DNA of 64,000 nt from Perna viridis. Lineage: Eukaryota. The position numbers were made by a program, and so were the translations under genes. The stretch spans positions 26,722,001 to 26,786,000 of the forward strand of contig CM074516.1 of the NCBI GenBank assembly GCA_037379345.1, written 5' to 3'. The notes below the pieces were generated by a model. That model worked only from the letters and a program-made list of their open reading frames with translations. It was not told where the DNA came from and did not search any database. How positions within the stretch are numbered: the stretch's first letter is position 1; each line of letters starts with the position of its first letter. Positions 103 through 51,300 of this stretch are shown here, piece after piece.

Positions 103-318
103 AACAAGAAGCAGCTGAACAGGAAGAAGACATGAATGCTGATCACTCTGCTGATAGAAGCTTAGGTACCATAGCTGAAGATGATGACACTCCAAACTCT
201 GAGGTGACTAAGACTGAAGACACCAAAGATGATCATAGTTCCAACATGCGCACAGATGATGTTGTTGAAACTAAAGATACTAATCAAGGACTTGGGGAAG
301 AACATTTGGCAACACTAA
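103..318 (+). CDS. dynein exon (acidic tail insert)
   Basis: ttcag acceptor, gtaagt donor, phase 1-1, EQEAAEQEEDMNAD... Confidence 0.75.
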
Positions 319-27300: not shown

Positions 27301-30300
27301 TGTAGTCATGTTTTAAATTATTGTGAGTTTATTCAGTCTATTAAAATTTATTTACTGTATAATAGAATTGAATTTCACAATCTGTATGAACTATTTGGAA
27401 ATGAAAACTTCTGAGACATCATTTTATGTACTCTAATTAAACTTAATTTTTTTAGTAGACTATAATTGAGGCGTTACATCTCTAAACCAGTATTGATGAA
27501 ATTTATGTTTTGTAATTGCCTGAAATGAGTGCATTGATTTTTACAGAGGAAGAACATGAGCCATTGATCTGGATTCTAGACACATGTTACCATTACTGTA
27601 ATGAGTTCTACGGGGCTGAGCCTGGTGTTGCTTTGACTCCTGTCACAGAGAGATGTTTCCTTACGATGTCTCAGGCTCTCAATAATGTTCAGGGCAGCCA
27701 TCTTGTTGGACCAGGTGGTGTAGGAAAAACAGAAACTGTCAAGGTAATTCATGTGATTTACTCAGTATTAATGAGGTATTAATAGTGAGCTGTAGAAACA
27801 GGATCAGATATGGTGAAATCCAACAATTGCACATGTGTATTACCTGAATACAAAAAAAATTAGATACTATCAGAGATCACCGAGGTTCTTCAGCAATTGT
27901 AAACGCACCTTTACACAAGTTCTGGAAGACCCTGACAACAAAAGTTATAAGAATGATGATACTTCTTAAAAAAAACAACTAAAAAATACAATAATGACAC
28001 CTAGACATATTAATGACTGACATCTCCTGACTGCTGACAGGCACATGTCTATGGTGGGGTTATACTAATGTGATATATAAGCACATTGTTGGTGGGTTTG
28101 AATACCTTACAGCAGGAGTAATTTTCTTTTTGTTTTTTTTGTTTTTTTTTGGGGGGGGATTTTGATTTTCAAAATCCAGATTTCCTGCTTGGATACTCTA
28201 TTATTCTGTATACTTATTTCCAATTTTGTCAATTTCTGTTTGAGTTTCTTGATGGCTGTATTGTACAAAGTATTCTAAGTATCAATCAAGTATTTACATA
28301 AACCAAAACCTTTACATTGTCTTGCAAACAGAGTTTAATGGTAACAGATAATTTGAACAGAGTTTGGGGGTATCAGAACATAGAACCATGCAGAATAACA
28401 ATACAAAATTATATTCTATTATCCAAAGTTACTATGTATAAAAACTGCTGTTTTCCATACTATATATTGTCTCCTTAATTAGTTGAGTTATATTGACATA
28501 ATGTTGATGAATTGTTTGAATTTCATTTTGTTTTCTTTTATTTTCAGGGACTAGCTAATTTGTTAGGAAAATTTTTGATGTTGGCTCAGTGCTCACCAGA
28601 GAGCAATACAAGTGGAATGGGCAAGATTGTCCAAGGGACTGCAATGGTAGGAATTCATTTCAAATAGGGCTAACTGCTTAAATATTAGTTCAAAATACAA
28701 AATAGCTAATAAGAAATTAGTTTTCTACTGTTCTACAAATTTCAATACTTGCAATAAACATACTTTTTTATTGAATATAGAACAACAAGAGTAAAACAGG
28801 TGTATATTGTAATGAACTAAATTGATTTAGAAAAAAATATGCTGTGTCCTTAAACATTTTATATCATTGACAATTGCAATGATTTAGAACTATAACTATT
28901 GTTCATTTTTACAAATATTGAATTTTCAGGAAGGATGTTGGGCATGTTTTGATGAAGCACAGACCCTCAACAACCTGTCCATGTCTGTAGTATTAGACTT
29001 TGTCACCTCAGTTTTAACAGCTCTTAAAGCCAGACATAGCTATGCTTCTCTCAGCAATGGTCAAGAGGTTAGTTAAAGTTCTCTAGTGAAAACATTCTTG
29101 GCTTGCACAAGTTATAAGAGGGAATAACAAAACTGTATCTGATATATTAGACTGTTTTTGTGTGTTAAATAAAAAAGATAGGGGATCTCTAGGTATCAAG
29201 GTACAATGTGAAGAAAAACTGTAACAATATTGAAAAAAAAATGAAAGAAAAATTCGATTGAATAAACATCTTGATATAAAAAAATACATTAAGTTTGAAG
29301 TATAAGAAAAAAGAAGTCCTTAAAGAATACTGAATTGTTTATATTCCTTATTTGCATCCTATTTCAGATCACTTTGAAGAAAGGCCTAGCCCTTCACATG
29401 ACCTCTAACCCAGCTGCACAACCTCCATCATGTAGAATGCCAAATTATGTGGCTGCTATATTTAGAACTGTTTCTCTGATTAAACCAGATCATTGTCTTG
29501 TGTTGAAGGCCAAATGTGCCTCACATGGATTTAAAGTACCAAATATTCTTGGAGTCCGGCTGAAGACATTGTCAGATCTTACCATTAACCAGCTGTAAGT
29601 ATTATTTTAGATAGCCCCAGGATTTTTTCCAGGATTTTGAAAGCTTCAGTCACTTTCGTGTGAGAAAATGAGGACCATTTTTATGTTGCTTTTTGTTTTT
29701 AAGTTCGGTAGTATTTGCATCTGACATAAGATATTTTAGAATCATCTGTTATTTACAGCACTGTGTAAAGACATGAAATAAATCATAAATGTGCATGTAC
29801 ATTGCATATGAATAAAGCACAAATTGTTTTCATTGTTATGCAAGCATGTTTTCCAGAGAATCCAAATAGGATGCCTGAGATTTAATTTAAAAAGGAAACT
29901 CCCCAACTTTTAAGAATCATCAAAAATAGAAATCCCTTTACACTTTTATACATTAATTAAGGGCATACGTCTCAGCATAATTATAAATATATTTCAAATA
30001 ATAAAAAAAAAGGTATTTTCTGCATTGCCACCCTTTGTAGAAACACAAAAATACATCAAGCACAATGTAAATATGGAAGTGCCTTAACTTGCACCAGTGC
30101 TACATTGGACAGATATAAATATATTCAAATAGGTTTTTCCCTATTGTTGCCTCATGAGATTCTATTTTTAGCACAATTTTCAACTGTGCTTTTGGGATCC
30201 AGACTGAGTTGATGATAAATTTATGTCATTATTTTTCAGTCATATAAATTTAGTATTGGTCCCTCAGGAATTAATTGATGGCATAAATGATATTTTCGAG

Positions 30301-33300
30301 ATCGTAAATAGTGCTAACATACAACTACAAATTGTAGTGACCAAATTACCTACATTTGGTTTACGCTCAAGTTTGATGTACAAAAAATGATAACTTTTTA
30401 TGTCATTTTGATACAAAGTTAATGAGAAGTAAAGGAATTTTGCCAGCTGCAATTGTCACCGGCATTTGAACTTTCATGCTTGAGTGCTCATGAAATTGAC
30501 ATTTATGCCACGTGCCTGATTAGTGTAATTGGCAAATTAGGTGATTGTTTACACATTTTGACACCTGTTGAGAGTTGTAATTAGCTTGGGGTAATAATAT
30601 TGTCACTTTTGCCAATTGAACCAATGTTGGGCTTACAGCTCTAAATGTTTTTTGTACTTTCGAAGATTTCAAGTGATGAAATGAGACTAGATTATTTTTG
30701 TCATTCTGAAAAGTCTTTCGTCATTGGCAAAATTACGAGCACTAGAAAAATCACTGGCTAGCCCTTGCCTTAAAGGGGAGATCTATCAGCTTGACATTTC
30801 CATAGTAAAGGCATTTGTTTCTGTATGTAAGAATATTAAATAAATTTCAATTATTGTAGAAAAGATGTATACAGTCATGGTGTTTATCAAGTAATTAAGT
30901 AATGGATGACCTAAGGGAAATCCACACCCACTGTTTACATTAATGAATACCAAAATGTCAAATCTCTTAAAGATACCCCAAAAGAATGCGGAATATGTGG
31001 CATATATGCCCAATGAATGTTTTCTTTGACTGCCCAATAAATGTGTACATATTACATTAATGTTCAATTTTTACAGACCACCAGAAGTCCACCATCTCTT
31101 TGGCATTGCTACATGGACTGGTGTCTTGAAGAAAGCTGCCATGAAGAAGAGAACCATCAAAGATGATAAGTTTGTAGACAAAATGGATGCCAGGAGAGAT
31201 GAGACATCTCGATCTGAGAGCCAGGCATCAGATAATGTTGCTCAACTTAAGACAGGAAATATCATGAATCCTCAAACCAGTGTTACATGTAAATATGCAT
31301 TTTGTTTCAATATTAATCAAAGAATATTAGATAAACAGCTAACTTCAATATTGATGAAATTTACTAAGCCTTAAATTGCTACTTAAATTGAGGTATTTGG
31401 AAAAAAGTGATATTGAAGTGCAAACAATAAATACCTGAAATATTTGATACATGGTAAGGTGTATAATTGAGGCTTTAAGATTGTACACATTGAATACAAA
31501 CAATTTACAGGGAGAAATACAGCCAGGTTTGAAGCAAGCAATTTAAAAAAAATGTTGACTATTTGTTTCTTTTATTTTCAGTGGCAGCCCCAAGTTCTAT
31601 TAAGATGGGAGGAACAACACTAACAGCTGGAACCAGGAAGATGGGAACACCTAATCCTATGACTCTAGCTGCCAAGATGGAGCATGCTTTAGTTTGTCAG
31701 ACAATCAAAGAAGTTATCTGTCCCAGAATGACTGAAGAGGTAGGAGTAACTAAAAAAATTCTGTTTATTATATATTTGTCTTTTATTTTATGAATTACTT
31801 TCACAATAAAGGTGAATTCATCAACAACAAAAAAGAAAAACATTGTATTAAAAGCCATATGTAAGTATTACTGCCATTTTGTATTCAATTAAAAGAAGGA
31901 CATTATTTATTCTTTACTTTTACAACAGTCCCAAGTAGATTTTTTGTGGCCATCTTAAGATGCAATTTTATTTTTGTTTACTTGAAACTCTTAATTCACT
32001 TTTTTTCAGAAGTATTACCTTTAAATAATTTTGCAACAATGACTACATATACAGTAGGTCTGACTGTAACTAGTATAATTATTGCAAATATTGTTGTATA
32101 TAAGCCTCACAAATTTGTTTTTTTTATCATTGCAAACATTGTTTTATTGAAAAAAAAAACTCACAAATTTGTTATCCTTGCAGAATAACAAAGTCTTTAA
32201 GAACATACTAGATGACGTTTTCACTGGTCTACCTGATGCTCCACCACCAAAGAACACTTTCTCAGCCAGATCACGTGGCATGGATGTGGAGCTAGCACTC
32301 AAACAGAAAGCAGTAGAAAAAGGGTTATCTGCCCATGAACCCTGGATCAGCCGTTGTAAACAGCTGTATGAGACATCACAGGTCTATCATGGTAAGATTT
32401 GCCTAGTCCTGTAGTGAAGGGAAATGGAAACTATTTGTAGGTGTTGGCTTCTAAGTTTGTACATTCAGAAATTGCTCAATAGAAAAACCAATCCATATTC
32501 TTCAAGAATAGAATTGTATTGCTGTAAATTTTCTACTTTGACTCAATCAGTTAAATGAGTATGGCTATCCTACAAGAATAAGGGTCTTAGAATATTATAA
32601 AACATTTTAATTTTATTTGTCATGAATTAGAGAGCATGTATCAGGTAGAATGGCTATTTAGGTGTTTTCTGCTTAGCTAGGACTACCTGTGATGTGGCAG
32701 AGTAATTTTGATTATCCTCTAATTAGGAAATGTTGTATTTTGATAAATGATATGAAATATGTCAATTTAAAAGTTATTTTATGTCTTTGAAATCTAATTC
32801 CAGAAAATAATCATAGAAAAAGATGAATTCTTGTCAATGAGTAATCAAGGAAACCAAGATTCTAGCGCAAATCAAAGGAATTGAATCCAGGGACAAAGAC
32901 AAGACATGGAAATATAGTTAATATTGTGATTTTTTTTTTACCAGGTGTGATTGTAGCAGGACCTCCTGGCAGTGGTAAGACCAGTTGTATCCAGACCCTT
33001 GTTGATGCCCTCAGTATCCAGACAAGAGGTGCTGCCTCTCGAGGCTCACACATCAGCCGTACCTCTAACCCTGCTGAATCACAGCACAAGATAATCAGAA
33101 TCAATCCCATGGTGGTAGATGATTATGCAATCATGTTTGGTTTTTTGAAAGACAATCATGATTGGGTTGATGGAATTGTTACCTCATCCTGCAGGAAAGC
33201 TAACAGAGTAAGTCTGAAGTACAGCTGTAGATCATAAACCATTATTCCTTGTGTTGTACAAAGCTAAACTGAACAACAAAGACTGAAAAATTTTGGTTTG

Positions 33301-36300
33301 GTTATGGTATATGTTTATACAAAATATATATGTATAGGAATTGAATGGAAAAAATTCTTGTGATAAGGACTGGATTTGTTTAAGGTAAATGCAAATACTT
33401 AGGTCACTTTCTCAGATTGTTGGCTTAGATATAACATCATATGAACAAGTTTAAAAGTTTATACTTACTATATGTATGTTGCTTTGTGTTACTCAGAAAC
33501 ATAAATGGTTATGCTACAAATGTTAGATTTAAGAGATGGTTCTGTGACATACTAAGTTTTGTCCTTTTGTTATTTAATGAGGTTAATATCATTGCTGTGG
33601 CTAGTTTCTGCTGTTAATTTGCAGTTAATTAAAATAATTATTTTTCAGAACCAAAGTACCACTTGGATATGTCTAGATGGACCACTCAATCCTGGATGGT
33701 CAGATAACTTCAATGCTGTCCTCAGTGAGGAAAAGGTAGGTGCAGCATGATATGATGTTAGAAAAGTTATTCTGATATTTTCAGTTGATCAGAAGAAAAT
33801 AAGATTAGGTGAAAAAAACAAATACACTTACAGCTTGTTGACATGAAATAAAATAATATATGGATGAGGCATGGAATCATGAACATGAGGCTTTGCAAAG
33901 TGTTTAATCCAATTCTTGCTGAATTTGCATATTGTTTTATTTCTGATTAAAAAAACTGTTATTATCATTTTACAGTTATCTAAATCACTGTTTAGTTTGT
34001 TAAGTTTTTATTTGTTACTTTTCTATCCTGCTTGTGATCTCTGATAGTGGTGCTAAAATAATAAGTGGTATTATTAATGCATTTTAGTTGCTCTGATAAA
34101 ACTATTGCAGTATAAAATTGAAATAATTATTCTCGACAGCGATGTACTTCTGAATTGTGCATACAGATGTCTGTGCTTTTATTTGTTAAATATGAGTAGA
34201 AACAAGAGGTAGAAGAACCAGATCAAAGCCACATAACAATGCTTTACTGATTATAGGAAAAACAAGTGGACTTGAACTTTTGTCTAATTCCTATTGGTGC
34301 TAAGATCCAACCTAATTGTCTGAGGAAGGTTGGGGGAGATGAATTATAAGATTCTTTAAGTACAAGTGCCACTCTACTTACCAAATGATCAATGATATTT
34401 CAGCATATGATTTTTTTTTGCTTCTTCCAGGTGATACATCTTAAGAATGGAGACAAACTATTCCTGTCAGAAAACATCAATGTTGTATTTGAGACTGATA
34501 ACCTAGCTAATGCCTCCCCATCAACAGTGGCCAAATCTGTAAGTTGTTATTTTGTCAGAAATGCAGGGTGATATTTTGTGGTTCTATCCTGTTCTATTAT
34601 ACTCGGTTGACAACCTTTTTTTAACATTTTAGGGTATTTATTGTACAACTGTTAAAGCTTCTTTATTCTGGTTGGAATGTTTCCGACTTTATATTATTCA
34701 TATAAATTTCATAGGCAGTAATTGTTCCTAGGATATAGCATTACTTAAGTAAAAAACGTGAGGCAGTTTATAAAAATTGTAAACTTGCCTTAACCAGATT
34801 CAAAAGTTAGAAACATTCCTTATTATTTTATGTGGGATGGATGATAAATTTTAATTAATTTAATAATTTAAAAAAAATTTAAATTGATTTGTAATAAGAA
34901 GTGTATTTTGTTAGGGATTATTTAAATCGTGGAGCACAGACCAATCAATGTTAATGGTGTTAATAATCAGAAACTTTATTACAATTTAAATTAAATTATA
35001 AAGATATGAAAATTGTATTTCCTTACATTGTTGAAGCACGTTCAAAATTTTCTAAAATACCAAAAAATATTATTATCAGTAGTATACTCACGTTCTCTTT
35101 ACAGGGTATTGTTTACCTTGACAACAATGTGGTAGGATGGAAGCCTATTGCTGATGCCTGGTTGGAAAGTAGGACACCTCAAGAAATACATGTATGTATC
35201 AATTGATCTTAAGTATGGAATTTTAAACTGCATGTACTTATAAGACATGTCAGGAGTAGGAAATTAGGGAAACAAATTTATAGCTATTGATAAAAGTTTG
35301 TTAAGAGGATTAGAGGTAGAATCTTTAGAAATGGAATGTGATAAGCTATGAAATTATTCTTTTCTACTTCCTCTGCTTCTGAGTGATATTTATATATAGT
35401 CTGTTTCAGTATAAATAGATTTTTGTTCTTTCCATTAAAATATCAGTTTATGCACTACTCTGTATTTTTCTAAAGTTTCATGAAATAGGCTATAATTTGA
35501 AAGTTACTCTATGGAACAATACACTCAAAATAGTCATTTCATATTCAGATAAGACCTTCTAAAACATGACAATTATTTTGCAATGAAAATGAATCTAGTT
35601 CTACTTGTTTTTTATTCTACATATTAAAGAAGTGCCACTCCCATTACATCCCCCAAAAAGCATAATTCTCATTTTATGTGTTTTTTGACTTAATATAAAT
35701 ATTTCTACCTATTTTACCCCAGATTCAGGTAGGTTAAGTTTGAGGTTGTTTATCTGCTGGATAGGGAAATGTCACGCAAACACCAAAAATCCAGACTCTC
35801 ATCACTCTATATCACTGTAGAAGGTAGATTTCTGATTGGGTTGAAACTTGATCTAGTATTCTTGTTTGTTTGATTTATATAATGTTTGTCTTTCTGTGAA
35901 ATGTTTGAAAGCATTCAGTGACATTGAATTAAAGACAATCTTTTAGTATGTTACACAGACTTGAAAAGATAATTACAGTGATCATGGTGTCTGTTCATCC
36001 GTCTTCATCTTTTTTCGGTGAAGTTTTTTTGTGTTACTACTCATCACACAGCCATTTGATATTTTGACAGAAGCGTTATATAGGTATACTATATGATATA
36101 ATTTGAGATTTAGACTGAAACAACATCAACTTCCTGTTTTACGACTTTTCTGACTGGAGTAAGGAGCATGGTTATCCTTTAGTGAGTGTTGCTCACAGTT
36201 TTCTAGTTTACTACTGAGAAAGTTTTTTTTTCAAATTCATTTATTCTAGTGTTAAAAGTAACTAAAGAGACATATATTTCATTTGTCATTGAATGCACCT

Positions 36301-39300
36301 TGAAGTTTTGAATAGTATTATAGCTTTTCATATCTTCATGATGGGTATTTCAGTTGGAAACATGTGTGAGTTGTAGCTTCTTATTAAATAATAGGGGAAC
36401 ATTTTTTGATAACTTTAGCAAAATTTCACTATGAAAATTTATTTTTAAAAAGAAGAATCCTTTGTGTTTCTTTATTACATTTATATATGAATGAGAAATA
36501 AACAAAATACCTTTAAACTGTTCAATTATATAGTCTTGATTATAAATTATGTTCAAATCAGCTGCTTAGTGTATGTTAAACACTAGCTGTTACCAAACAA
36601 AAAGCAATCCCATATGCCAAAGTTATATAATAATTTAAGTTGTTCAGTTAAGAGCATGTTATTTTTCTCTCACTTCCCAGTAGAAGTTTTATCACGAAAC
36701 CTAATTACTTGAATCACAATAGATTTCCGTAATGAATAGTGTAGAACTTTAAGGAAAGGAAAAAAAAAACACTAGAGTAGAGTTTGTAAGAGAGAGAAAA
36801 GTTAAGTAAGAAATTATTGTACAGCTTTGTTATTGCAATTTTGTTGAAACATTTGCAATATAGAACTTTATGTTATTTGAGTTATTGCAAGGTCAGGATT
36901 AATCTGAAGTATGCATTGGTGAAAATAGTCGGTTATCATGTTTAAATTATTTTGATAAAATTTGTCACACTTATTGCAATAATGATACTATGCAATAAGT
37001 TCTGTTCTTACTGGAGTCAAAATAGTATGAATGTAATACAGTCTACTGGATTTTACGGATGCAGCTAAGAAAATATGAAATGTATTGTAATTCTAAGATG
37101 ATTTAATCATGCACTGTCTATTTACTGTCAGTGGGTGATCATTTAAACTTCACTTTGGTGGTGGTTTGGTCAAGTATTTTAACCTCTGTCACTGACTGCA
37201 ATATTGTTCTAAGAAAAAAATATTTTTGCAGAGATATGCAAAAGAAGTAAGTTCCATGCAAGTGTTTGCTGGCTCACCAATATGTATTCATGTATAGAAA
37301 AAATAACTTTGCTAAAATGCAAAAATAATGTGCTTATATACTGAAATTAGATATGTGTTTTAAAAGTTATGGAAGTGTTGCAATTTACATAGTGATAGGG
37401 TTAGTTCAGTTTGGCCCTTATCTATGATAATTAGATGTTTATAAAAAGAAATGTTTGAATTTTTAAGGTACCTTTAATTTTCAGTTTACATCATTTCATC
37501 CATTCATTCCGTGATCATGTTTTATAAGTTTGTTGATTATTTCATAACTCTTCAATTTGAACTTGCAGCAGAGTTTTTTTGAAGCCTGAAATTTTATATA
37601 GCATTTTAATCACAAAAAAAAATGGTTTACTTAAACCAATATTTCTTCATTAATAAGAGTAACAAAGTTCTTGAATTCACACTGCATCTTAAACTGGACT
37701 TGCTAAAAACAAAAGAGAATTTAATATATTTTCTAGTTTTTCTAAGGTTATGTGAAGCAAAAGTTTACATTGCTTATTTACATGAGTGGTCTGAAGTCCT
37801 ATTTTGTTTTGCTAGATGTGGAAAGTTTGATCATCAAGTGTCAGTCCCTGTAAGAATCAGGCAGTGGGTGAAACATTGTATGAAAAAAAAACCAAAAAAC
37901 ATCATATTGGTAGTGTAATTTGACTATTTGCACCATCAGAATCAAGGAAAGCAGACAAGATTTTCGATATCATGCTGGACCATTGAGTCACAAATTCATA
38001 GAAATATACTGAAAATGAACATTTCAAGGGCAGATAACTGTCAAAACCTCATTTTTTGAAGATTCTATTGAAAAACTTGTGTGCAGAGTCAGTGATGCAG
38101 AGATCAAATAATGGTCTTTTCAAATAGAGAAAGAATCCTTGAGTGATATTACAGTGTCAAATCGATGAGGGTTTGACATGCATGTTTCTGATTTTTCTCT
38201 ATTTGCCTGATTCTTATGAGCACTTACACTGAAATGTGTATTTTGCTTAATTTCATTTTTCACATGTTTCTAATAAGACAATAGTATTTTCATGTTGGAA
38301 TATAATGATAATGCATGTATCATTGAATTGAAATATTTAAACAACACAGTTTGCATAATTTTGCCAGTTTCAGGGGCTGGCTTTTTATGAGAATTCTCAC
38401 ATCATCTTGAAATTAGTCATGTAACAATATCATAAGTTCTTACATTGAATGAGAAGATAGTTTTAATCTAAATTTCATGGTTCATTTATCATACATCCCA
38501 ATGTCTTACAAATCTGATGAATGTAGTAACAAACTTTATAGAATTGTGGAATTTTAAAACTGAAATTTCTGTTTTATTTTAAATCAATCAGAGGCCTGTT
38601 AATGTTGAGCAAGGAGAAACAGAACAATCAATTCCCAGAACTGTAGAAGGGGTAATAATTGATGTGGTGTATGGTGCATTATGTGTGTTTTTGTAGAGGC
38701 ACACATCTTGTTTAATGGGACTGCATTAATGTTGTTAATTTTTTGTTTATTGTGTGCATTTATGGATTAGGTTTTAATAGGAAATTTGTTTTGATTTATC
38801 AAAACCTTATTATCTACTGGTAGTGGCCATTTTCACTTTTTTCTCATCTTTTTTTTTACAGAAAGTATTTCTTTCCAAACTCCTTCCCCTATCCCACCAA
38901 AAAAATCCTTAACTATGTATAAACCTGATGTTATGTTTTTGAAATGATGACTTCACTTTCTATATGTTATCATACCCAATAGGTATATGGAAAAAGATCA
39001 GCATGGAAATAGCTGGTCATTTTGGAACCTACCAGAAAACTTATTATGTTGGGATTTTTTTTTAAACTATACATTTAACCTTGATTTCAATTTTTTTTTA
39101 CAAGGATATGTTATTTTTTTTGCACTAATTCATGTATGGTATCAAAATCTCTGCATGTGAATGCACAAATGACTCCCATCTGCATGGCTTGACACAGTTT
39201 TCCTTTAGTGTGTGACTCACCATCAGACACTTTTATAAGTGGCATGAACTGTTAATTGCTTCTGGCTGAGCACAGAATTCTATGTAGGCACTTAATTTCT

Positions 39301-42300: not shown

Positions 42301-45300
42301 AAATTTTCTTGATATTTAACTCAAAATTAGCAAAATTGTAGTGTTAAATTAAATTAAATTTTAGAAATTTACACTTGAAAATGTTCATTATCCTACTGGG
42401 TTGATATAAATATCCTGATAACTTAAATTGCTTCTTGCAAACTCTTCATTTGATTAGCTCTGGAACAGTGTTCTCCTAAAATACTTTAATTCAACAAATT
42501 TAACTGCATGTGCATTATAGACCATTTAAAGCTTATGTATGATAGTCACTGACATAGTCTTATCAACAAAGCTCTAATTATCATACTCCACTGATATCAT
42601 TCAATTGATTTTGTATTGAAACAATCACTTGATTAAACTGAAGTTGCTTCCCTGGCAATTTGGAAATACATAAGTATATCACAATGTGTGGTTCGTGCGA
42701 ATTTCTTTCTGGTCCAAAATATAGTATCATGACTCATTTAAATGATCCTCAGCAACAGTCCTAATTTCTTCAGTGCTTTTTATTCACCTATTCACATATT
42801 GCTGATTACTCATTTACATTTAATTCTTGAATTTTCGTTACAGGTAAACCTTTTAAGTTGACCAAAAATAATTACTTTCGTTGAAAAAAAAATTTTTTGT
42901 CTTTGTTATAGAAAGATGAACAGCACCCCCACCCCCCACCCCCCACCAAAAAAAAATTCTTGTGACAGTAAATGTACTTTTTAGCTGTTTTTTAATTGAT
43001 ATCACTATTCATATATTGAGATGTTGCAGTTATTTTAACATTCAATAATTTACCTTCTAATAGAAAAAGGGAAACAACTCATGTTGCTAAGTAAAAACAG
43101 TAAGTTTAGATTTGTAGTCATTTCTAAAGAGATATTTACTTGTTTTCATTCCTACTTCTTTTGATTTATATCAATGTTAGGTAGAATTGTTTTGAGGTCA
43201 AGCAAGCGTTTTTCAGTTGTGTGGATTTTACTTATTTCATCGTCATCTGCTTTATAATTCTTTTATGTACAATTTGCTGTCCAAATTTTTTATGCATCTA
43301 AGTTTTTCCTCTGTTTGCTTGAGATGTCTTATATACTGAGAGTTTGTTTGATACATTGTATATGCAATATTGCTAAACACCATCTTTTTGACGTCAGATT
43401 TGTAACATTTTTTATAAAAGTTTCTGCTAATTAAACAATTAAATAATTTATGAAAGTTTCAAATTTTCAAATGCATCAAATATAGGAAGAGAAATATGGT
43501 GGAATGTTTGTTTTAGTCAAGTACATGTTTAAGAAATTAATAGGGAAAAGTTATGTTCAGTGTATGGAATTGAGTTCTAAATTTGAAGAAAAGAATAGGC
43601 TGAATTTTAATTTTTTTACAAGTTTTCACTAGTCACATCATGGCGCAAGGCATGCCTTGTTGAACTGCTAAAAGATTATTGTAAATTCAGAAATTATTGT
43701 ATTAATTAAAATTTCAGAATTTTCTCACAAAAGCCAAATTTCATTATTAATTTTCATGTTTTAAGAAAAATCACACATCAGTAATTGTAAATCATTCCAT
43801 ATTTTAAGTTTTTGCATAGTAGCCTAGCTATATTGTTTCAGTAATAAATTAAAATAGGATGTTAAATGACTTGGCTAAAGGATTTATTCTTTTCTTTAAT
43901 TGAATCATTTGTTATTGGAGTATCGCCAAGTGGTTTATGATTTGACCCTCAATGATAAGGTATAATTTGTTAAGTTAAATTGTGCCCTCCTAATTTGATT
44001 GGGCTGTCTGTGGCATTTTTTTGAAACAATAGAAACTTCGCAAAATTTTCTGAATTGGCAATATTCAAACCCTTTTTTGGAAGTAGGAATGAGATGAGAG
44101 TAAATCGGTTTGCATTCAATTTAAATTTAATCCTGCTTGTTTACTTTGTCTCTCTGATGTTTTTGGTTATTGTCTTTATAACTTTTGTGTGTGCATGGTT
44201 TTATTTTCTAGAACGGTTGCAGCATTACAAATCTTCTTCTGGTAAAATCTGTTTTGAATTTTAGTTAATGCCAGAGTTGATAATTCTGTATGCCAGTGAA
44301 CAGATACAGATGCTATTAAATTATGATTTTGCATTTTAAATGAAAAAGAAAATTAATTTGTATAAAAAAAACAAACAACAAATAATACATACAAATCTAT
44401 GAAAAGAACTTAACTGTAACATCTTGCAAACAAAATATCAGTTGAAATAAACAAATAAATTGCTAACATAACATTAAAATCAGCTGACTGGAAAAATACC
44501 CAATAGAAATTTTTCATATCTTGCAAACAAAACATCATTTTTTATAAACTGAATGCATGGCAAAATTGAAAGTAAGAAATGCAGGGATAAAAATTAGCAT
44601 TTGCCCATTAGCCCATGGCTACTAAATTTTGAGCTGGGCTACCAAACTTTTGGGTAAAATTTAGTTAAACATATAGAAAATATTGAGCAAAAATATGGTC
44701 TGGGCTACCAGGTTGTATTTCCTAATTTTTACCCCTGAAATGTTGCAAAAAGTTATTAATAAAACCAGCAACAAACAGTTTATGAAGTATACAACTGAAT
44801 TGTAACTCAGATATTTATGTATCAAAAATATGTAGCGTGGACATAGTAATGGAAAACAAAATATCATAATTAAACACCTGCTACAGGTTTTTTATTTTGA
44901 ATATGATATCAAGCATGTATCTATGTAATGGATGTAAAACATATATCTATGTAATGCTAGATTGGGTGGTATGTATTGTTGTTTTTTGTTGATATGATAT
45001 GTTCAAAATTTGTGATGGTTTTTTCAAACTTGTTGTATTTTAACTGTATATTAAAATCAAATTTGACAACTGATTGAAGAAGTTTTCAGTGTTTTTAGAT
45101 GGAGGATTTTCAAAAGGAAATGATATAATAGTTAACTTTACACTGTAATTGTCAGTTAGGTAACATAAGAAGCTGATCATTTTCAGAATATTGCTTTAAA
45201 CATGATAAAGTAAGCTTAGCTTGTAGAAATGTTTAAGGTCATTTTTGCTTCAGCTAATTGAAGAAGAAGGGCAGTCCTTGAATCAGTTTTTATACCATGT

Positions 45301-48300
45301 CAACTATTTATATTTAAATGATATACTTGTATGTTTACAGATCCCCAGATATCTGTTTGTAAGAAGTTAGTATTCTCTGGAGCGTCCAGTGCACAACAGC
45401 TACAGAATTTCATTGACTCTAACATCTATCACAGACAAGGTAATGCCGTTAACACTCAGCCCTGCTGTAATATACTGTGTCCGCTTTACTGGGCATGGTT
45501 TCATAAAAAAAATCTGAACTTGAGATTTTTCTCAAATCCTTCCTCAACTCCAATTTTGACCAATCACATCACTTGAAATTGAAGATTTGAGGAAAAAGTC
45601 TAGGATTTTAAGATTTTATGAAACCCTGGCCTGTTTTTGCAATGCCAGGTTTATTTTGTGCTTGGGATGATTAGCAAGATTAGTCGCTAAATACTCCTTT
45701 AAGAACAAAAAAAAATATTTTACTTTCATAGCATCTCCACGAAATAAAACTAATATAGTCATTTCAATGATTAAGAGGCCAAAACTTCATCTTGGGAAAT
45801 AAAGCAAAATTGTTTGGGAGAAAAAAAAACTTTACTAGAAATTGGTCATGGGGATAAATGATCCTTTAAATATTTCAGGTTTTGTATATGGAGCTAAAGA
45901 GAACAAGAAGTTGAAGGTGTTTATAGATGATGTCAATCTACCACTGCCTGACCATTACAGTGTACAAAGGTGTAATGAGGTAATGTGTTATTTTTATCCT
46001 CACCAATGATGTTTGGAAAGAATGCAAAACAAGTTATAAATAATTTTGTGAGGACAAGAAATTTTGGAAAATAAATGTTTTCAATGCTGTCACTTGGTAC
46101 TTGCTATGAGCTTAGTTATCTGATGAAATTTCACAATTCTAAGTTGATTTCAGTATATTGATTTTCAACTTTTCAGTTCATTTCTCTATCATATTTTTCT
46201 TTGTAGGCTTGTGTGTTAGCTTTTTTTTACAATTCTTGGTGTCATGAATTGACATTATATGAATTTTACTATTTGTTTGGTCATAATCACTTTTAATCTA
46301 GGCATAGATTTTTTTTTTACAGCTCCTCAGACAGTTACTGGATGACAAGACACTGTGCACACTGGAGAAACCATTTGAATGGAAGACAATAGAAGGGTTT
46401 AATGTGATAGCTGCCATGTCAATGAGTGATAACCCTGGGGTATCCAGTACCAAGCTTTCAGAAAGATTCCTGGTAGGGATGACACTAGTTTAAAGTTTCT
46501 TTACTCAGGTTTCTTGCCATGTGGGCTTCGTTTTGGCTCACAGATTTCTTGTTAAACTCTGCCCTATGGGTTTTGGCTCACAGATTTCTTGTTTTAATAG
46601 AAAACCTGTCCCCTTTAGTTCAGTAATTGTGTTTTTATACTGTTTTTTTTTTTTTTTTAGAATTTCTGTTTAAAAAGTTATATCTAGATTAAAGTAAAAC
46701 AATTTTCTGTATGTTTTTGACTTTTTTTTTAACAGAGACACTTTGCAGTGTTCCATTTAACAGCACCAGAGGGTGAATCATTGAAGAACATTGTCCATGG
46801 TATTCTGGATGTAAGTAAATATTTATATAAAAAAATGAAAACGTTGGTCTTTTTGGTCTTATTGATCAATATAAATTGATCTTTTAATTAGGTAAGGAAT
46901 GTTTCTACTTTTTTTAACAGGTTATATGTATTAACCTGGTTTGGGGCAGTTTACCCTTATAACAGGGAAGGTTTCTTATAATTTAATTTTTTACAGATAA
47001 TAGTCCAAATATCAATAATTGATTCATAATCGAAAGTTATTTTGTTCTGGATTTTTTGAATCTCCAAGTGTGAACCAATCAATATTAATGACAGCCAGGT
47101 TATACAAAATAACCTGGTTTGCTCATAGAGAACCAACTAATCAGAAAGCTTTTAACAAATCTAATCAAATTATTGACTCATAAAGGATTAGCTACCAGCA
47201 CTGTTTATAATTGCAAATTTGTGTCGTTTAAATTTGACACATAAAACAGTAAAAAGGTAGAAAAAGTAATGTTTCTCTTTCAGAAAATTTAATCCTGGTC
47301 TTTTATATATTATAGCTGAACATGACAGATGGAGATGGACCAGGTTTAGATATAGAACTACACAACCATCTAGTTAAGGCATCCTGTGATCTGTTGTCAG
47401 CTGTTCAGGATGTCCTTAAATCTACACCCATGCCAGGACGTAAACATTACTTCTATACACTCAAAGATGTTACTACTTGCTTCCAGGTAATGAAAATGTC
47501 ACTGAATAAATAATTGACAGACTTGATTGCATTGAACATGACTTGGTAGAATCTAAAATATAATGTTTCTCATCATATCTGTGTAAAATTTTGAACTTAT
47601 ACTTGTATTAAGCATTTGGGAGATTATTAAAACCCACTATTTCTATGCCTGTACCAAGTCAGGACCATTTTTTTAGGCTTCAAACTTTCTGGTTTTTACC
47701 CTGATATTGCTATTTGTGATACCGACTTTCCTTTTGACTACTCCTTTTAACTATGTCTTGAGTTTATGGGTTTGATTTATGATTTAAAATGTTATGATAA
47801 TTTTTTTTTTTTTATCTTTATAACAGTGTTTGAAGAGACTGCCCGAGGAAAGCAGAGCTGATGAGACCTTGGTTCCTGTTATATCACTATGGAAACATGA
47901 AATGACGAGGATTATGAGGGACAGAATTGCTAGAACATCAGACCTAAACTGGTTTGATCAGACTATCAATGAAATACTGGCTGAGGTAAAGAAATAAATT
48001 ATTTCACATTTTTTTTATAGTTGGTGTTTAGATGGTACCTTTAATGTTGTTATATAATTTGTATTCTGTTTGTTATAAATCAAGACTAAGAAATAAATAT
48101 ATATACTGTGAAAGTACTTTAATTCCTGGATACCAGTTTTCGTGGATTAGGAAAGAAACAGAAGTTCATGAAGTCTTAAATTTGTGGCTATACACATCAA
48201 TGGGATTCTCCTTTTCTTTGGGAACCAAATTTTGTGGCTTTGTCTACCACGAAAACCACAAAAATTGATGTCCCGCAAACAATAGTACATTGACAGTAAC

Positions 48301-51300
48301 TATCATTTGATTCACAAAGTGTTGTAATTATATTTAACCTGAAGACAACTCTAGTATTGGTAGCATAGAAAACAATTACCATTACTATTATATTTATATT
48401 GCTAATTAAATTACAAAAAATGTCTAAACACTCATTCAAATTAGTCACAGTAAAAAAGAACACTATAGTATTTTTTCAGATTTATAGTAAAGTTTATAAA
48501 TAAAAAAAAAAAGACTTATAATTTTTGACAAATAATTTGTTGATTTAACTCCAACTGAATATTAAAATGTTACAATTGTTTTAGAATTTCCCTGAGGTAA
48601 AGGACCCATTGATGAATCACTTTGTAACCTTCCCAACTGATGCCAGACTTTACCAGAGACCCGTCACCTCTGTAGGTGGTAAAAATGTCAAGGTATGTCA
48701 CAGTACAACATATAATGGAATGGATTTGGCATTTCTTTGAGGCTTGTCTTATAGCATGAAATGTCAAGGGTCATTTAAATTTTTGTTCTGCGTGATACTA
48801 ACATATAAATATGTATTGGCAGTATCAAATTTTAGGGAAATAAGACAAAACATTTTCATGGTTTTCAAGTTACAATGATGCACTTAGTCAACTTCATCTG
48901 TATATAAGTTGTTTAGGTTATTGATTGCCTGAATGTAGCAGGCATGTTATAGGCCATTTGAAAGGTGAAGAAATAACTTCTATGACAGAAAGAGCCAAAT
49001 TCTTGTTTGAAATGACCTTTTATGAACACATTTGTAAAGATGTAAATAACTTGGATTTATAAAAAGGCTAAAATATTGATCTTGATGTTTTCTTTGTTTT
49101 TGAAAATAAAAATTCATGTTTTTTCTTATTTCAGATTATATTACAACCAATAGAAAACTTAAGAGATGTCCATAGTTGTCTGAACACACATCTGACAAGA
49201 TATAATGAGGAGTTTGGTAATATCCCACTGAACATCATGCTTTCAGATTTCATCATTGATCATGTGGTCAGGATGCACAGAATTCTCAGCTTCCATCATG
49301 GGTATGGTTGAAATCTTAAGTATCAGTTCTTGTAAGAATTAGGCAGTGGGTGAAACATGGTATGAAAAAACCCATCATTTTGATAGTGTAATTTGACAAT
49401 TTGCACGATCAGAATCAAGGGGGAAAAAACAAGATTTTCCATATCATGTTGCTGTATTGAGATTTAATTTCATTGAAATGCACTGTAAATAAACATTTTA
49501 AGGGCAGATAACTTTGTCAAAACCTCATTTTTCTAAGATTCTATTGAAAAATCTACAAGCAAATCCAATGATGCAGAGATAAAATAAGGGTCTTTCCAAA
49601 TAGAGAAAGTATTGATGAGTGATATTTTATTGTCAGGTAGGTGGGGTTTTGACTTGCATGTTTCAGTTTTTCCCATTTTGCCTAATTCTTACAAATACTT
49701 ACCCTTAAACTTTTATTAACTTCTTTAATTACAATTAGAACAGTATGATGTAGGTAATACATATATAACAAGGAAGATTTTCTTCCACTTTTTAGAAGAT
49801 TTTGGCATTTTCAGGTCTGGATTTTATTGTTATGATTCTTTCATTTACTACATAATTTTGCCAGTTGTTCCTTGTTAATTCTAGAATGTTATTAGATGAC
49901 AGTTTTATTTACACAAATATACAATACAAAGCCTTAAAACCTTGTACATTAATTTATTCTTGTTTTGATTTAGATTTGCATTATATAGAAGTACCATGGT
50001 AAAGGTAATTTATTTTGAATAATTGAAGGAGAGAGAAATTGTCTAAAATAAGTTCATCTTGCAAAAAAAAAAAAAACAACACTTTGTTAAACATGGATTT
50101 TTCCTACAAAACTGTTGTAAACATGTCTCATACACATTGAAAAAAAACAAAATGGTTTCAGGTGCTCATCTCTATAAATTTAATTGTCTATATTTTATTC
50201 CAGTGGAAATCTATTGCTTATTGGAGCAGTTGGAGCTCATCTAACTACTCTGTGTAGACTAGCCCTACATGTAGCTGACATCCCTATTCATAAAATGGAC
50301 TCTTCCAAACAAAGTAACTTTTTTGATGGACTCAGATCAGCTGTCAGACTCAGTGGAGCTGAGAATAAGATTCTCACTGTTCTTTTCACTGCCAGAGATT
50401 TACAAGACCCAGTTTACCTTGATGCTATAAACAGTTTGCTGATCAGTGGAGAGGTTCCTCATCTGTTTACTAATGATGAAATTGAGGGATTACTTCAGGT
50501 CTGTTATAACAATCTACCAGTGGTACATGTTAATACAAAGAAAAAAAATCTCATTTAGCTTTGTCATCTTATCTACATTGGTTTGTTTGTCTGGTGTATA
50601 TGTCTTTATGTCATGATTTTTTACCATTATGAAGTGTTCACCTTTGCTAATCTCTCATTTTTATATTATCTCCTGTGTACAACCATTTATGAGACAGGAG
50701 CAACTTAACTGGTGTCTCTCAAAAGGAATTATCCTTCCTTCCGTTACACTAGAGGGATCCATCTCTTTTCTGTTACTCTTCCCACACCACTGAATTGAAT
50801 TGAATGAAATTTTCACAGAACCTTTATAACATGTTCCCATTGTACACCTTTTATTTTAGAATTCGATCCTAATCAATTTGGAGGTTTCATGTAGCAAATC
50901 ACGAACTTCATCATTTATTAATATTGGCAAATGGGGGATCCATTTCTTATCGTTACTCCTCTTATACCACTGAATGGAATTAAAAGAAACTCTCACAGAA
51001 TCCATTACTCATTTTATTTTAGAATTTGATCTAAATGGGCAAGTGGGCGTATGAAGTTAGTGAGCATTTCACACAGTTTTTGTAGTTAAATCTAGGATGT
51101 TAGTGAGCATTGCACGCAGTTTTTCTAGTTAAATCTAAGATGTTGTATTTCACTGAGATTTTCCTTGATAGAATGCATTCTTTTGATGATTATTTTAAAA
51201 TATGTTTATTATTAGTGATATATATTGATAAGTTGTATATTTACATTTACTAATTGCAGGCTATAGCACCAGCTATGAAGAGGGAATTCCCCAGTATGTC

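What the first reader, a model, noticed from the sequence alone, without database searches (positions are those of the whole stretch)
27547..50498. Intact-frame dynein with systematically substituted ATPase residues: candidate pseudo-enzyme dynein
Established: dynein AAA1 hydrolysis uses Walker A GPAGTGKT, Walker B FDEFNR, sensor I (TMNPGYAGR), the sensor II Arg (HYDFGLR) and an Arg finger from AAA2 (ASPATVSRCG). Seen here: GPGGVGKT and CFDE are kept, but FNRI>AQTL, NPGYAGR>NPAAQPP, GLR>GIA (Ala codon 31108-31110) and TVSRC>TVAKS (Lys codon 34533-34535). In AAA3, HYxFNLRD>HYFYTLKD and PGGGR is lost. In AAA4, Walker A GVGGSGK>GAVGAHL (50223-50243). Yet 63 exons stay in frame and structural motifs are conserved. 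Inference: a nucleotide-binding but hydrolysis-impaired dynein acting as a scaffold, brake or sensor, maintained by selection and not a pseudogene.
Basis: partly seen in the sequence, partly recalled or inferred. Interest (0 to 1): 0.8.

Follow-up and report, generated by a model that had tools for sequence, protein, structure and literature searches.

The report
Mussel copy of non-motile dynein DNAHX

Summary
The window carries 62 in-frame GT-AG exons of one + strand dynein heavy chain. In it, the AAA1 Walker A reads GPGGVGKT and Walker B keeps D-E but has lost FNR. Sensor I has lost Tyr and Arg. The sensor II Arg is Ala (31108-31110) and the AAA2 Arg finger is Lys (34533-34535). The AAA3 sensor II Arg is Lys, and the AAA4 P-loop Lys is Leu (50223-50243).

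The gene is not new in kind. It is the mytilid ortholog of DNAHX, the non-motile dynein subfamily of Chai et al. (bioRxiv 10.1101/2025.01.18.633724).
- It is 50% identical to the type protein XP_041462850 and 87% identical to the Mytilus californianus ortholog, against 28-31% for canonical dyneins.
- It nests inside a fully supported DNAHX clade.
- It carries the family's AAA4S insert (predicted beta-hairpin plus helix) and its stalk and microtubule-binding-domain inserts.

It is spliced in RNA-like contigs from three studies. dN/dS against M. galloprovincialis is about 0.04. Seventeen other dynein loci in the same genome keep the canonical motifs.

Small additions: the AAA4 P-loop lysine is lost in 79 of 80 family members, the Arg-finger loss is lineage-specific, and DNAHX occurs in internal fertilisers. 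The scan had not noted this family before.

The parts
147..63997 (+). Window part of the DNAHX gene: 62 exons and 3475 codons, from tail through linker, AAA1-AAA4 and stalk/MTBD to CC2. The whole gene runs from about 8050 bases before the window to about 18800 bases after it.
   Evidence: Spliced model guided by four mollusc orthologs: all introns GT-AG, no stop. Flanks fetched from G000 cover residues 1-585 and 4129-5367 of the Mytilus ortholog.
27547..27743 (+). AAA1 Walker A exon. The motif GPGGVGKT lies at 27708-27731, with Val where canonical dyneins have Thr; Lys and Thr are kept.
   Evidence: Pfam AAA_6 hit; exon ends confirmed by spliced contigs; alignment; coordinates.
28930..29067 (+). 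AAA1 Walker B exon. CFDEAQTL lies at 28945-28968; the acidic pair D-E is kept and the FNR triplet is replaced.
   Evidence: the FNR Asn is absent in 80 of 80 DNAHX and present in 20 of 20 canonical dyneins.
29368..29594 (+). AAA1 sensor I exon. NPAAQPP lies at 29407-29427; Asn is kept, while the 'backdoor' Tyr and the Arg of NPGYAGR are lost.
   Evidence: The RNA contigs carry T instead of C at 29593 (synonymous Leu).
31077..31288 (+). AAA1 small-domain exon with sensor II. FGIA replaces FGLR, with Ala codon GCT at 31108-31110. A disordered DNAHX-specific insert starts at 31162 and runs into the next exon (to 31670).
32945..33207 (+). AAA2 Walker A exon. GPPGSGKT at 32959-32982 is intact.
34431..34538 (+). 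AAA2 exon carrying the Arg finger that reaches into the AAA1 site. TVAK replaces TVSR, with Lys codon AAA at 34533-34535.
   Evidence: The position is Lys in the window gene, 3 of 3 Mytilus sequences and 25 of 26 amphibians, Ser in 6 of 13 gastropods, and Arg in most other DNAHX and in 20 of 20 canonical dyneins.
41725..41839 (+). AAA3 Walker A exon. GPHGSGKT at 41785-41808 is intact.
47316..47486 (+). AAA3 small-domain exon with sensor II. HYFYTLKD lies at 47445-47468, with Arg replaced by Lys at 47463-47465.
   Evidence: Lys occurs in 23 of the 24 mollusc database sequences (and in the window gene); Arg is kept in echinoderms, chordates and cnidarians.
50204..50498 (+). AAA4 Walker A exon. 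GAVGAHL lies at 50223-50243, and the P-loop Lys is replaced by Leu.
   Evidence: Pfam AAA_8 hit; (Leu in 79 of 80 DNAHX; Lys or Arg in 20 of 20 canonical dyneins).
52765..53264 (+). Pre-sensor-II insert of the AAA4 small domain (about 60 residues over exons 52710-52913 and 53225-53365). This is the DNAHX hallmark said to lock the C-terminal cap.
   Evidence: Absent from canonical dyneins and aligned with the insert of the type protein. Invariant residues occur across 27 sequences. AlphaFold2 of window:52711-52911 with 26 orthologs gives pLDDT 80 and helix, beta-hairpin, helix.
53671..63644 (+). Stalk and microtubule-binding domain with DNAHX-type insertions: an acidic insert in CC1, a Ser-rich disordered MTBD insert (55114-55219 and 59252-59292, across a 4 kb intron), a second MTBD insert and an acidic CC2 insert.
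   Evidence: Alignment with DNAHX and canonical chains. The Pfam stalk family PF12777 is missing from the precomputed domain lists of all DNAHX members and present in the canonical hits.

Best explanation
The window holds most of the mussel (family Mytilidae) ortholog of DNAHX. This is an animal-specific dynein heavy chain that appears to derive from the outer-arm alpha chain (DNAH5/8 type).

Inferred mechanism:
- The protein keeps the P-loops of AAA1, AAA2 and AAA3, so it binds nucleotide.
- At AAA1 it lacks the sensor II arginine, the sensor I tyrosine and arginine and, in mussels, the arginine finger from AAA2. ATP would therefore be held as a structural ligand and not turned over.
- AAA4 has no P-loop lysine and is probably nucleotide-free.
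- A folded insert in the AAA4 small domain holds the C-terminal cap.
- Insertions interrupt the stalk and the microtubule-binding domain.

The result would be a motor domain fixed in a pre-powerstroke shape. It would serve as a non-motile partner or template for another heavy chain ('dynein-X', phi-particle) and not as a force generator.

Shown here: identity of the gene, the residue states, the inserts, intactness, splicing and purifying selection. Taken from the preprint on the sea-urchin ortholog and inferred for the mussel: ATP-locked AAA1, the pre-powerstroke lock and heterodimer formation.
For: Family identity:
- A search with the AAA4 exon returned proteins of up to 5251 aa as best hits.
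- Word searches gave a family of 38-74% identity and mostly 5100-5650 aa. Scores then drop sharply to canonical dyneins at 26-30% identity.
- The family includes P0308 = XP_041462850.1 of Lytechinus variegatus, 5272 aa, which is the DNAHX type protein.
- My model is 87% identical to Mytilus californianus, 60-69% to other full-length molluscs (55-57% to two pulmonate snails), 50% to the type protein and 28-31% to canonical chains.
- In the tree the DNAHX clade has SH-aLRT support of 100. The window gene is sister to Mytilus, and the topology follows the species tree.

Hallmarks and function:
- The motif states match.
- The AAA4S insert is conserved and predicted as a beta-hairpin plus helix.
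- The stalk and MTBD inserts are present.
- The gene is collinear with 5277 of 5367 residues of the Mytilus ortholog. Stops occur only in overlapping HSP ends.
- Spliced contigs occur in runs of three studies.
- dN = 0.08, dS about 2, omega about 0.04; for AAA1 alone omega is 0.04-0.05.
- Cryo-EM in the preprint shows ATP in AAA1 and only the pre-powerstroke state for the sea-urchin ortholog.
Against: - No biochemical or structural data exist for the mussel protein.
- The mechanism rests on one unreviewed preprint about an ortholog that is 50% identical.
- The mussel protein keeps the Walker A Lys and Thr, the Walker B Asp-Glu and the sensor I Asn, and its finger is Lys rather than a neutral residue. 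Slow hydrolysis is therefore not excluded.
- dS is saturated, so omega is only an order of magnitude.
- The runs with spliced contigs are only guessed to be RNA, and their tissues are hidden, so sperm expression is untested.
- I built no structural model of the AAA1/AAA2 interface. That would need the joined protein, which has no reference and was left out.
- My tree has no metazoan DNAH5/8, so the outer-arm-alpha origin is supported only through protist DNAH5-like chains.
Confidence: 0.85

Rival explanations
1. The protein is still a working, but slow or tightly regulated, ATPase motor. The retained Walker A Lys/Thr, Walker B Asp-Glu and sensor I Asn, plus a Lys at the finger position, would support hydrolysis. 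The substitutions would tune the cycle and not abolish it.
For: Bivalves and basal gastropods keep the D-E pair and the sensor I Asn, unlike vertebrate DNAHX (D-D). The AAA1 core is under selection as strong as the rest of the protein (omega 0.04). Most DNAHX keep the AAA2 Arg finger, which is unexpected if hydrolysis is irrelevant.
Against: The sensor II Arg is lost in about 94% of the family and the FNR Asn in all members. The sea-urchin ortholog, which also keeps D-E and the finger Arg, shows unhydrolysed ATP and no post-powerstroke class under conditions where DNAH8 cycles. Mussels have additionally lost the finger Arg. The MTBD and stalk are interrupted, and the orthologs lack a Pfam stalk match.
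Confidence: 0.1
2. It is a decaying duplicate of an outer-arm dynein gene (a young pseudogene) whose frame is still open by chance.
For: Many invariant catalytic residues are replaced. The Pfam scores of its AAA1 exons are among the weakest of the dynein loci in the genome (45 and 29 bits).
Against: About 90 exons and roughly 5300 codons carry no stop. Transcripts are spliced and omega is about 0.04. Orthologs occur from placozoans to amphibians with a tree that follows the species tree. A real dynein pseudogene in the same genome (L034) is full of stops.
Confidence: 0.01
3. It is a member of the other degenerate 'orphan' dynein family, DNHD1, and not DNAHX.
For: DNHD1 also has a poorly conserved AAA1 site and many disordered insertions (preprint discussion).
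Against: [quoted passage not shown] The window gene keeps D-E and groups with the DNAHX type protein at full support. A different locus of this genome (L032), with a Walker B lacking both acidic residues, is a better DNHD1 candidate. I had no DNHD1 sequence to compare directly.
Confidence: 0.02

Closest known systems
DNAHX (type XP_041462850, Lytechinus variegatus; Chai et al., bioRxiv 10.1101/2025.01.18.633724)
   Same: Same clade, with 50% identity over 3543 residues. It shares Walker A Thr to Val, loss of the sensor I Tyr, loss of the sensor II Arg, a retained Walker B, the AAA4S pre-sensor-II insert, the stalk/MTBD inserts, and a length above 5000 aa.
   Different: Sensor II is Ala here and Lys in the urchin. 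The AAA2 Arg finger is Lys here and Arg in the urchin. AAA3 sensor II is Lys here and Arg in the urchin. Echinoderms and a hemichordate carry an extra 30-residue insert before sensor II that molluscs lack.
Outer-arm dynein alpha heavy chains (DNAH5/DNAH8; Chlamydomonas gamma)
   Same: These are the nearest canonical relatives by score (PDB hits DNAH5 and a 4730-aa mouse-sperm chain that I take, from its length only, to be DNAH8; kinetoplastid DNAH5-like chains). The overall domain order is the same.
   Different: They keep every invariant catalytic residue, are 4600-4700 aa long, have an uninterrupted stalk/MTBD and no AAA4S insert, and share only 28-31% identity.
DNHD1 (orphan dynein heavy chain of mammals, needed for sperm flagella)
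   Same: It is also a dynein heavy chain with a degenerate AAA1 site and many disordered inserts, proposed to be non-motile. Genetics link it to sperm flagellum assembly (papers listed).
   Different: It is said to lack the Walker B acidic residues and to be unrelated in sequence to DNAHX, with inserts at other sites. It was not compared directly here.

Membership tests
DNAHX | Groups with the type protein XP_041462850 in a clade separate from all canonical dynein classes | tested here: met
   Maximum-likelihood tree of 41 sequences over 1337 columns: the DNAHX clade has SH-aLRT 100 and the window gene is sister to Mytilus californianus inside bivalves. The type protein's identity was confirmed by accession.
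DNAHX | Unusual length (above 5000 aa) caused by insertions along the chain | tested here: met
   The gene is collinear with 5277 of 5367 residues of the Mytilus ortholog over about 91 kb. Most full-length orthologs are 5100-5650 aa. The full spliced length of this gene was not assembled outside the window.
DNAHX | AAA1 site with a retained Walker B but altered Walker A (Thr to Val), sensor I loop and sensor II Arg | tested here: met
   GPGGVGKT; D-E kept; NPAAQPP; Ala at sensor II.
DNAHX | Pre-sensor-II insert in the AAA4 small domain (beta-hairpin plus alpha-helix) | tested here: met
   An insert of about 60 residues at 52765-53264 aligns with that of the type protein and is absent from canonical chains. 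AlphaFold2 with 27 sequences gives strands 30-39 and 45-54, then a helix, at pLDDT 80. This is a prediction on one exon, not a solved structure.
DNAHX | Insertions in the stalk coiled coil and the microtubule-binding domain | tested here: met
   CC1, two MTBD and CC2 inserts are shared with DNAHX members. PF12777 is absent from the family's domain lists.
DNAHX | ATP held unhydrolysed in AAA1; motor locked in the pre-powerstroke state; non-motile | not testable with these tools
   Known only from cryo-EM of the sea-urchin protein.
DNAHX | Present in sperm axonemal dynein preparations; pairs with a second heavy chain (dynein-X) | not tested
   Spliced contigs show expression, but run tissues are coded and no proteomics was available.
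Canonical outer-arm alpha dynein (DNAH5/8) | Invariant AAA1 catalytic set (GPAGTGKT, DEFNR, NPGYAGR, sensor II Arg, AAA2 Arg finger) and an AAA4 P-loop lysine | tested here: not met
   All of these are altered except the Walker A Lys/Thr, the Walker B D-E and the sensor I Asn.
DNHD1 | Loss of the Walker B acidic residues in AAA1; sequence relationship to mammalian DNHD1 | tested here: inconclusive
   The first feature was tested and is not met: the Walker B D-E pair is present. The second was not tested, because no DNHD1 sequence was at hand for a direct comparison; the placement with DNAHX argues against it.

The most novel reading that the evidence does not exclude
Within a known family, the data suggest an ordered, lineage-by-lineage erosion of catalysis under strong selection for nucleotide binding.
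- The AAA4 P-loop lysine and the FNR Asn were lost before the family diversified (79 of 80 and 80 of 80 members).
- The sensor II Arg was lost almost everywhere.
- The trans-acting Arg finger was lost independently in mytilid mussels, amphibians and pulmonate snails.
- The Walker B Glu was lost only in chordates and pulmonates.

Mussels would then be a natural 'double-arginine knockout' that still keeps the catalytic Glu. This would be a clean system to test whether ATP acts purely as a structural ligand.

The family's presence in land snails, other internally fertilising snails, caecilians and salamanders would also overturn the preprint's link to external fertilisation.
Probability: 0.4. Interest if true: 0.45.

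Novelty: new member of a known kind. Interest (0 to 1): 0.35.

Why it matters
The result shows that a tool-less reading of raw DNA correctly recognised a pseudo-enzyme motor. It also ties that gene to a family known so far from a single preprint.

For dynein biology, the value lies in the comparative table. It shows which catalytic residues are dispensable across about 80 orthologs and which nucleotide-binding residues are never given up. This supports ATP as a structural cofactor in a locked AAA+ ring. Mussels release large amounts of sperm, which makes them a practical source for purifying the native complex.

The taxonomic spread found here also questions the proposed link to external fertilisation.

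Tried and rejected
- **PDB sequence searches.** Searches with the AAA1 and AAA4 exons found only canonical dyneins at about 50 bits, so no DNAHX chain is in the copy. The preprint's PDB codes are placeholders.
- **Pfam on single exons.** This gave only generic dynein AAA families.
- **Look-up of the full Mytilus californianus protein.** I used the 3166-aa M. galloprovincialis fragment instead.
- **dN/dS.** Only 1147 codon pairs could be mapped cleanly. The YN00 estimate failed because dS is saturated, so only NG86 values are given.
- **First HSP chaining pass.** It dropped several exons and was replaced by a junction optimiser. That optimiser reproduced 6 of the 7 introns (and both outer exon ends) seen in the spliced contigs. 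The junction at 31288/31582 and the exon 25350-25421 were set from the RNA evidence. The acceptor at 25350 is chosen by frame and consensus only.
- **Large alignment.** The sensor I Tyr and Arg columns are misaligned for canonical chains, and the echinoderm sensor II column falls on a duplicated-looking insert. For those positions I rely and on the preprint.
- The spliced protein has no reference. It was therefore never sent to a search, family, structure or fold tool. Exons were searched singly by reference, and the joined model was used only inside local scripts. As a result no model of the AAA1/AAA2 interface was made.
- **Rejected readings.** Pseudogene, canonical DNAH5/8 and DNHD1; the reasons are given under the rival explanations.


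Full report
**What is in the window.** The window is AT-rich animal DNA (GC about 31%) and lies at G000:C6:26722001-26786000 of a 723 Mb assembly. Open frames on the + strand carry dynein motifs from one end to the other. Single exons hit the Pfam dynein families AAA_6 and AAA_8, but weakly. Their best PDB matches are outer-arm alpha-type chains at only about 50 bits.

**Gene model.** I built a spliced model in local scripts from tblastn matches of four mollusc orthologs plus a donor/acceptor optimiser. It has 62 exons in the window, all GT-AG, and 3475 codons with no stop.

I then laid contigs of four public runs on 27400-33399. In three runs from three studies, one contig each joins eight exons: 27547-27743, 28548-28646, 28930-29067, 29368-29594, 31077-31288, 31582-31739, 32184-32391 and 32945-33207. 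Six of the seven introns match my model. The seventh, and an extra exon ending at 25421, were corrected from this evidence.

With flanks fetched from the same genome, the gene runs from about 8 kb before the window to about 19 kb after it. It is collinear with 5277 of 5367 residues of the Mytilus californianus ortholog. The only stops lie in HSP ends that overlap the neighbouring exon match.

| Site | Sequence found | Coordinates |
|---|---|---|
| AAA1 Walker A | GPGGVGKT | 27708-27731 |
| AAA1 Walker B | CFDEAQTL | 28945-28968 |
| AAA1 sensor I | NPAAQPP | 29407-29427 |
| AAA1 sensor II | Ala (GCT) | 31108-31110 |
| AAA2 Arg finger | Lys (AAA) | 34533-34535 |
| AAA3 sensor II | HYFYTLKD | 47445-47468 |
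| AAA4 Walker A | GAVGAHL | 50223-50243 |

In an alignment with canonical dyneins of all classes, these columns are invariant in the canonical chains. In the same genome, 17 other dynein loci keep GPAGTGKT, CFDEFNR, ITMNPGYAGR and HYDxGxR. The pattern is therefore specific to this gene.

**What it is.** A literature search for the orphan dynein DNHD1 brought up a preprint: Chai et al. [quoted passage not shown] It describes the following:
- a sea-urchin sperm heavy chain (XP_041462850, 5272 aa) that branches from the outer-arm alpha chain;
- Walker A Thr to Val, an altered sensor I loop, and sensor II Arg to Lys;
- ATP retained in AAA1, and only pre-powerstroke particles;
- a beta-hairpin-plus-helix insert in AAA4S;
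- insertions in the stalk and MTBD;
- orthologs from sponges to frogs, gastropods included.

**Linking the window gene to that family.**
- A full-library search with the AAA4 exon gave best hits in amphioxus, a caecilian, coelacanth, bichirs and a frog, up to 5251 aa long.
- Word searches with the caecilian and scallop proteins then defined a family of mostly 5100-5650 aa at 38-74% identity. Scores fall abruptly to canonical dyneins at 26-30%.
- The family contains P0308, whose accession is XP_041462850.1.
- My model is 87% identical to Mytilus californianus, 60-69% to other full-length molluscs (55-57% to two pulmonate snails), 50% to the type protein and 28-31% to canonical chains.
- In a maximum-likelihood tree, the DNAHX clade has full support. 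The window gene is sister to Mytilus within bivalves, and the topology follows the animal tree, as expected for orthologs.
- The clade sits next to DNAH5-like chains of protists with support 99. No metazoan DNAH5/8 was available, and long branches meet there.

The host is therefore a mytilid mussel other than Mytilus.

**Other family hallmarks.**
- AAA4S insert. Between helix H6 of AAA4S and the conserved 'GPTTY' helix, the window gene has about 60 extra residues (52765-53264). They align with the insert of the type protein and are absent from all canonical chains.
- The exon piece window:52711-52911, aligned with 26 orthologs, has ten invariant positions. AlphaFold2 predicts a helix, a beta-hairpin (30-39 and 45-54) and the start of a helix, at mean pLDDT 80.
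- The stalk has an acidic insert in CC1. The MTBD has a Ser-rich disordered insert and a second insert. CC2 has an acidic insert.
- The precomputed Pfam lists of all DNAHX members lack the stalk family PF12777, which the canonical hits have.
- A disordered insert also separates AAA1 from AAA2 (31162-31670).

**Is it maintained?** Yes. Besides the open frame and the spliced transcripts, I took 1147 codon pairs against the M. galloprovincialis ortholog (locus L031). They give dN 0.08 and dS about 2, so omega is about 0.04. For the AAA1 domain alone omega is 0.04-0.05. dS is saturated, so the figure is only an order of magnitude, but it is far from 1. For contrast, a DNAH6-like locus in the same genome (L034) is riddled with stops.

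**How far the substitutions are shared.** I tabulated 80 family members.
- The P-loop Lys of AAA1, AAA2 and AAA3 is kept in practically all.
- The FNR Asn is absent in all 80.
- The sensor II Arg is kept in only five amphibians.
- The AAA4 P-loop Lys is Leu in 79 of 80.
- The Walker A Thr to Val change is typical of bilaterian members, while cnidarians and Trichoplax keep Thr.
- The Walker B Glu is kept in most molluscs, echinoderms and cnidarians, and is Asp or Asn in chordates.
- The AAA2 Arg finger is Arg in most members. It is Lys in the window gene, in 3 of 3 Mytilus sequences and in 25 of 26 amphibians, and Ser in pulmonate snails.
- The AAA3 sensor II Arg to Lys change is a mollusc and hemichordate trait.

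The preprint's main text does not discuss the AAA4 P-loop, AAA3 or the Arg finger.

**Mechanism.** The conservation pattern fits the preprint's structural result: binding residues are fixed and sensing or activating arginines are gone. ATP would be a bound ligand that keeps AAA1 closed. The AAA4S insert would hold the C-terminal cap, and the interrupted stalk and MTBD would no longer couple to microtubules. The proposed role is a rigid pre-powerstroke partner for another heavy chain. For the mussel protein this is inference by orthology. Slow hydrolysis cannot be excluded, because the Walker B Glu, the sensor I Asn and a Lys at the finger position remain.

The joined (spliced) protein has no reference. 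It was used only inside local scripts and was not sent to any search, family, structure or fold tool. Exons were searched one by one by reference. For the same reason no model of the AAA1/AAA2 interface was made.

**Verdict.** This is a new (mytilid) member of DNAHX, with a few comparative additions.

Noticed in passing
window 40262-41443: Short stretches at 40530-40598 and 40941-40982 match the same ortholog residues as the start of the true exon at 41293-41443. Partial copies of that exon's 5' part therefore lie in the preceding intron.
   Followed up: partly
L034 (G000:C8:13281000-13290000): A DNAH6-like dynein AAA1 region with many in-frame stops and a damaged Walker B (CFDQFN). This is a genuine dynein pseudogene in the same genome and a useful contrast to the intact DNAHX gene.
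   Followed up: partly
L032 (G000:C5:2586000-2594000): A further divergent dynein AAA1 region whose Walker B lacks both acidic residues (SFNNIN). No stops were seen in the matched exons. It is a possible DNHD1-type orphan dynein.
   Followed up: no
L033 (G000:C11:28334000-28343999): Another divergent dynein locus whose Walker A reads GPSGVGKSE, also with Val in place of the canonical Thr. It scores no better against DNAHX than against canonical chains, and its class is unknown.
   Followed up: no
protein lists: DNAHX orthologs occur in animals that, to my knowledge, fertilise internally: the land snail Bradybaena, Lymnaea, Biomphalaria, Physella, Aplysia, Littorina, Pomacea, Babylonia, the caecilian Rhinatrema, and the salamanders Ambystoma, Pleurodeles and Lissotriton. 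This does not fit the preprint's suggested link to external fertilisation. In Lymnaea and Bradybaena, the two pulmonates I inspected in alignment, the AAA1 Walker B is also degenerate, and Bradybaena's Walker A as well.
   Followed up: partly
window 29593: All three spliced contigs read T where the assembly has C, the second-last base of the exon. This is a synonymous Leu codon change, probably a polymorphism between the assembled individual and the RNA samples.
   Followed up: no
window 32800-32999: Word depth in the four runs jumps to 3500-8000 in this bin, against 0-60 elsewhere. An abundantly represented repeat or small transcript appears to lie in the intron just upstream of the AAA2 Walker A exon.
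   Followed up: no
window 8066-8993: Long open frames in the 3.8 kb intron between exons 8 and 9 include a YIDD-type motif typical of reverse transcriptases. This is probably a retroelement remnant inside the gene.
   Followed up: no
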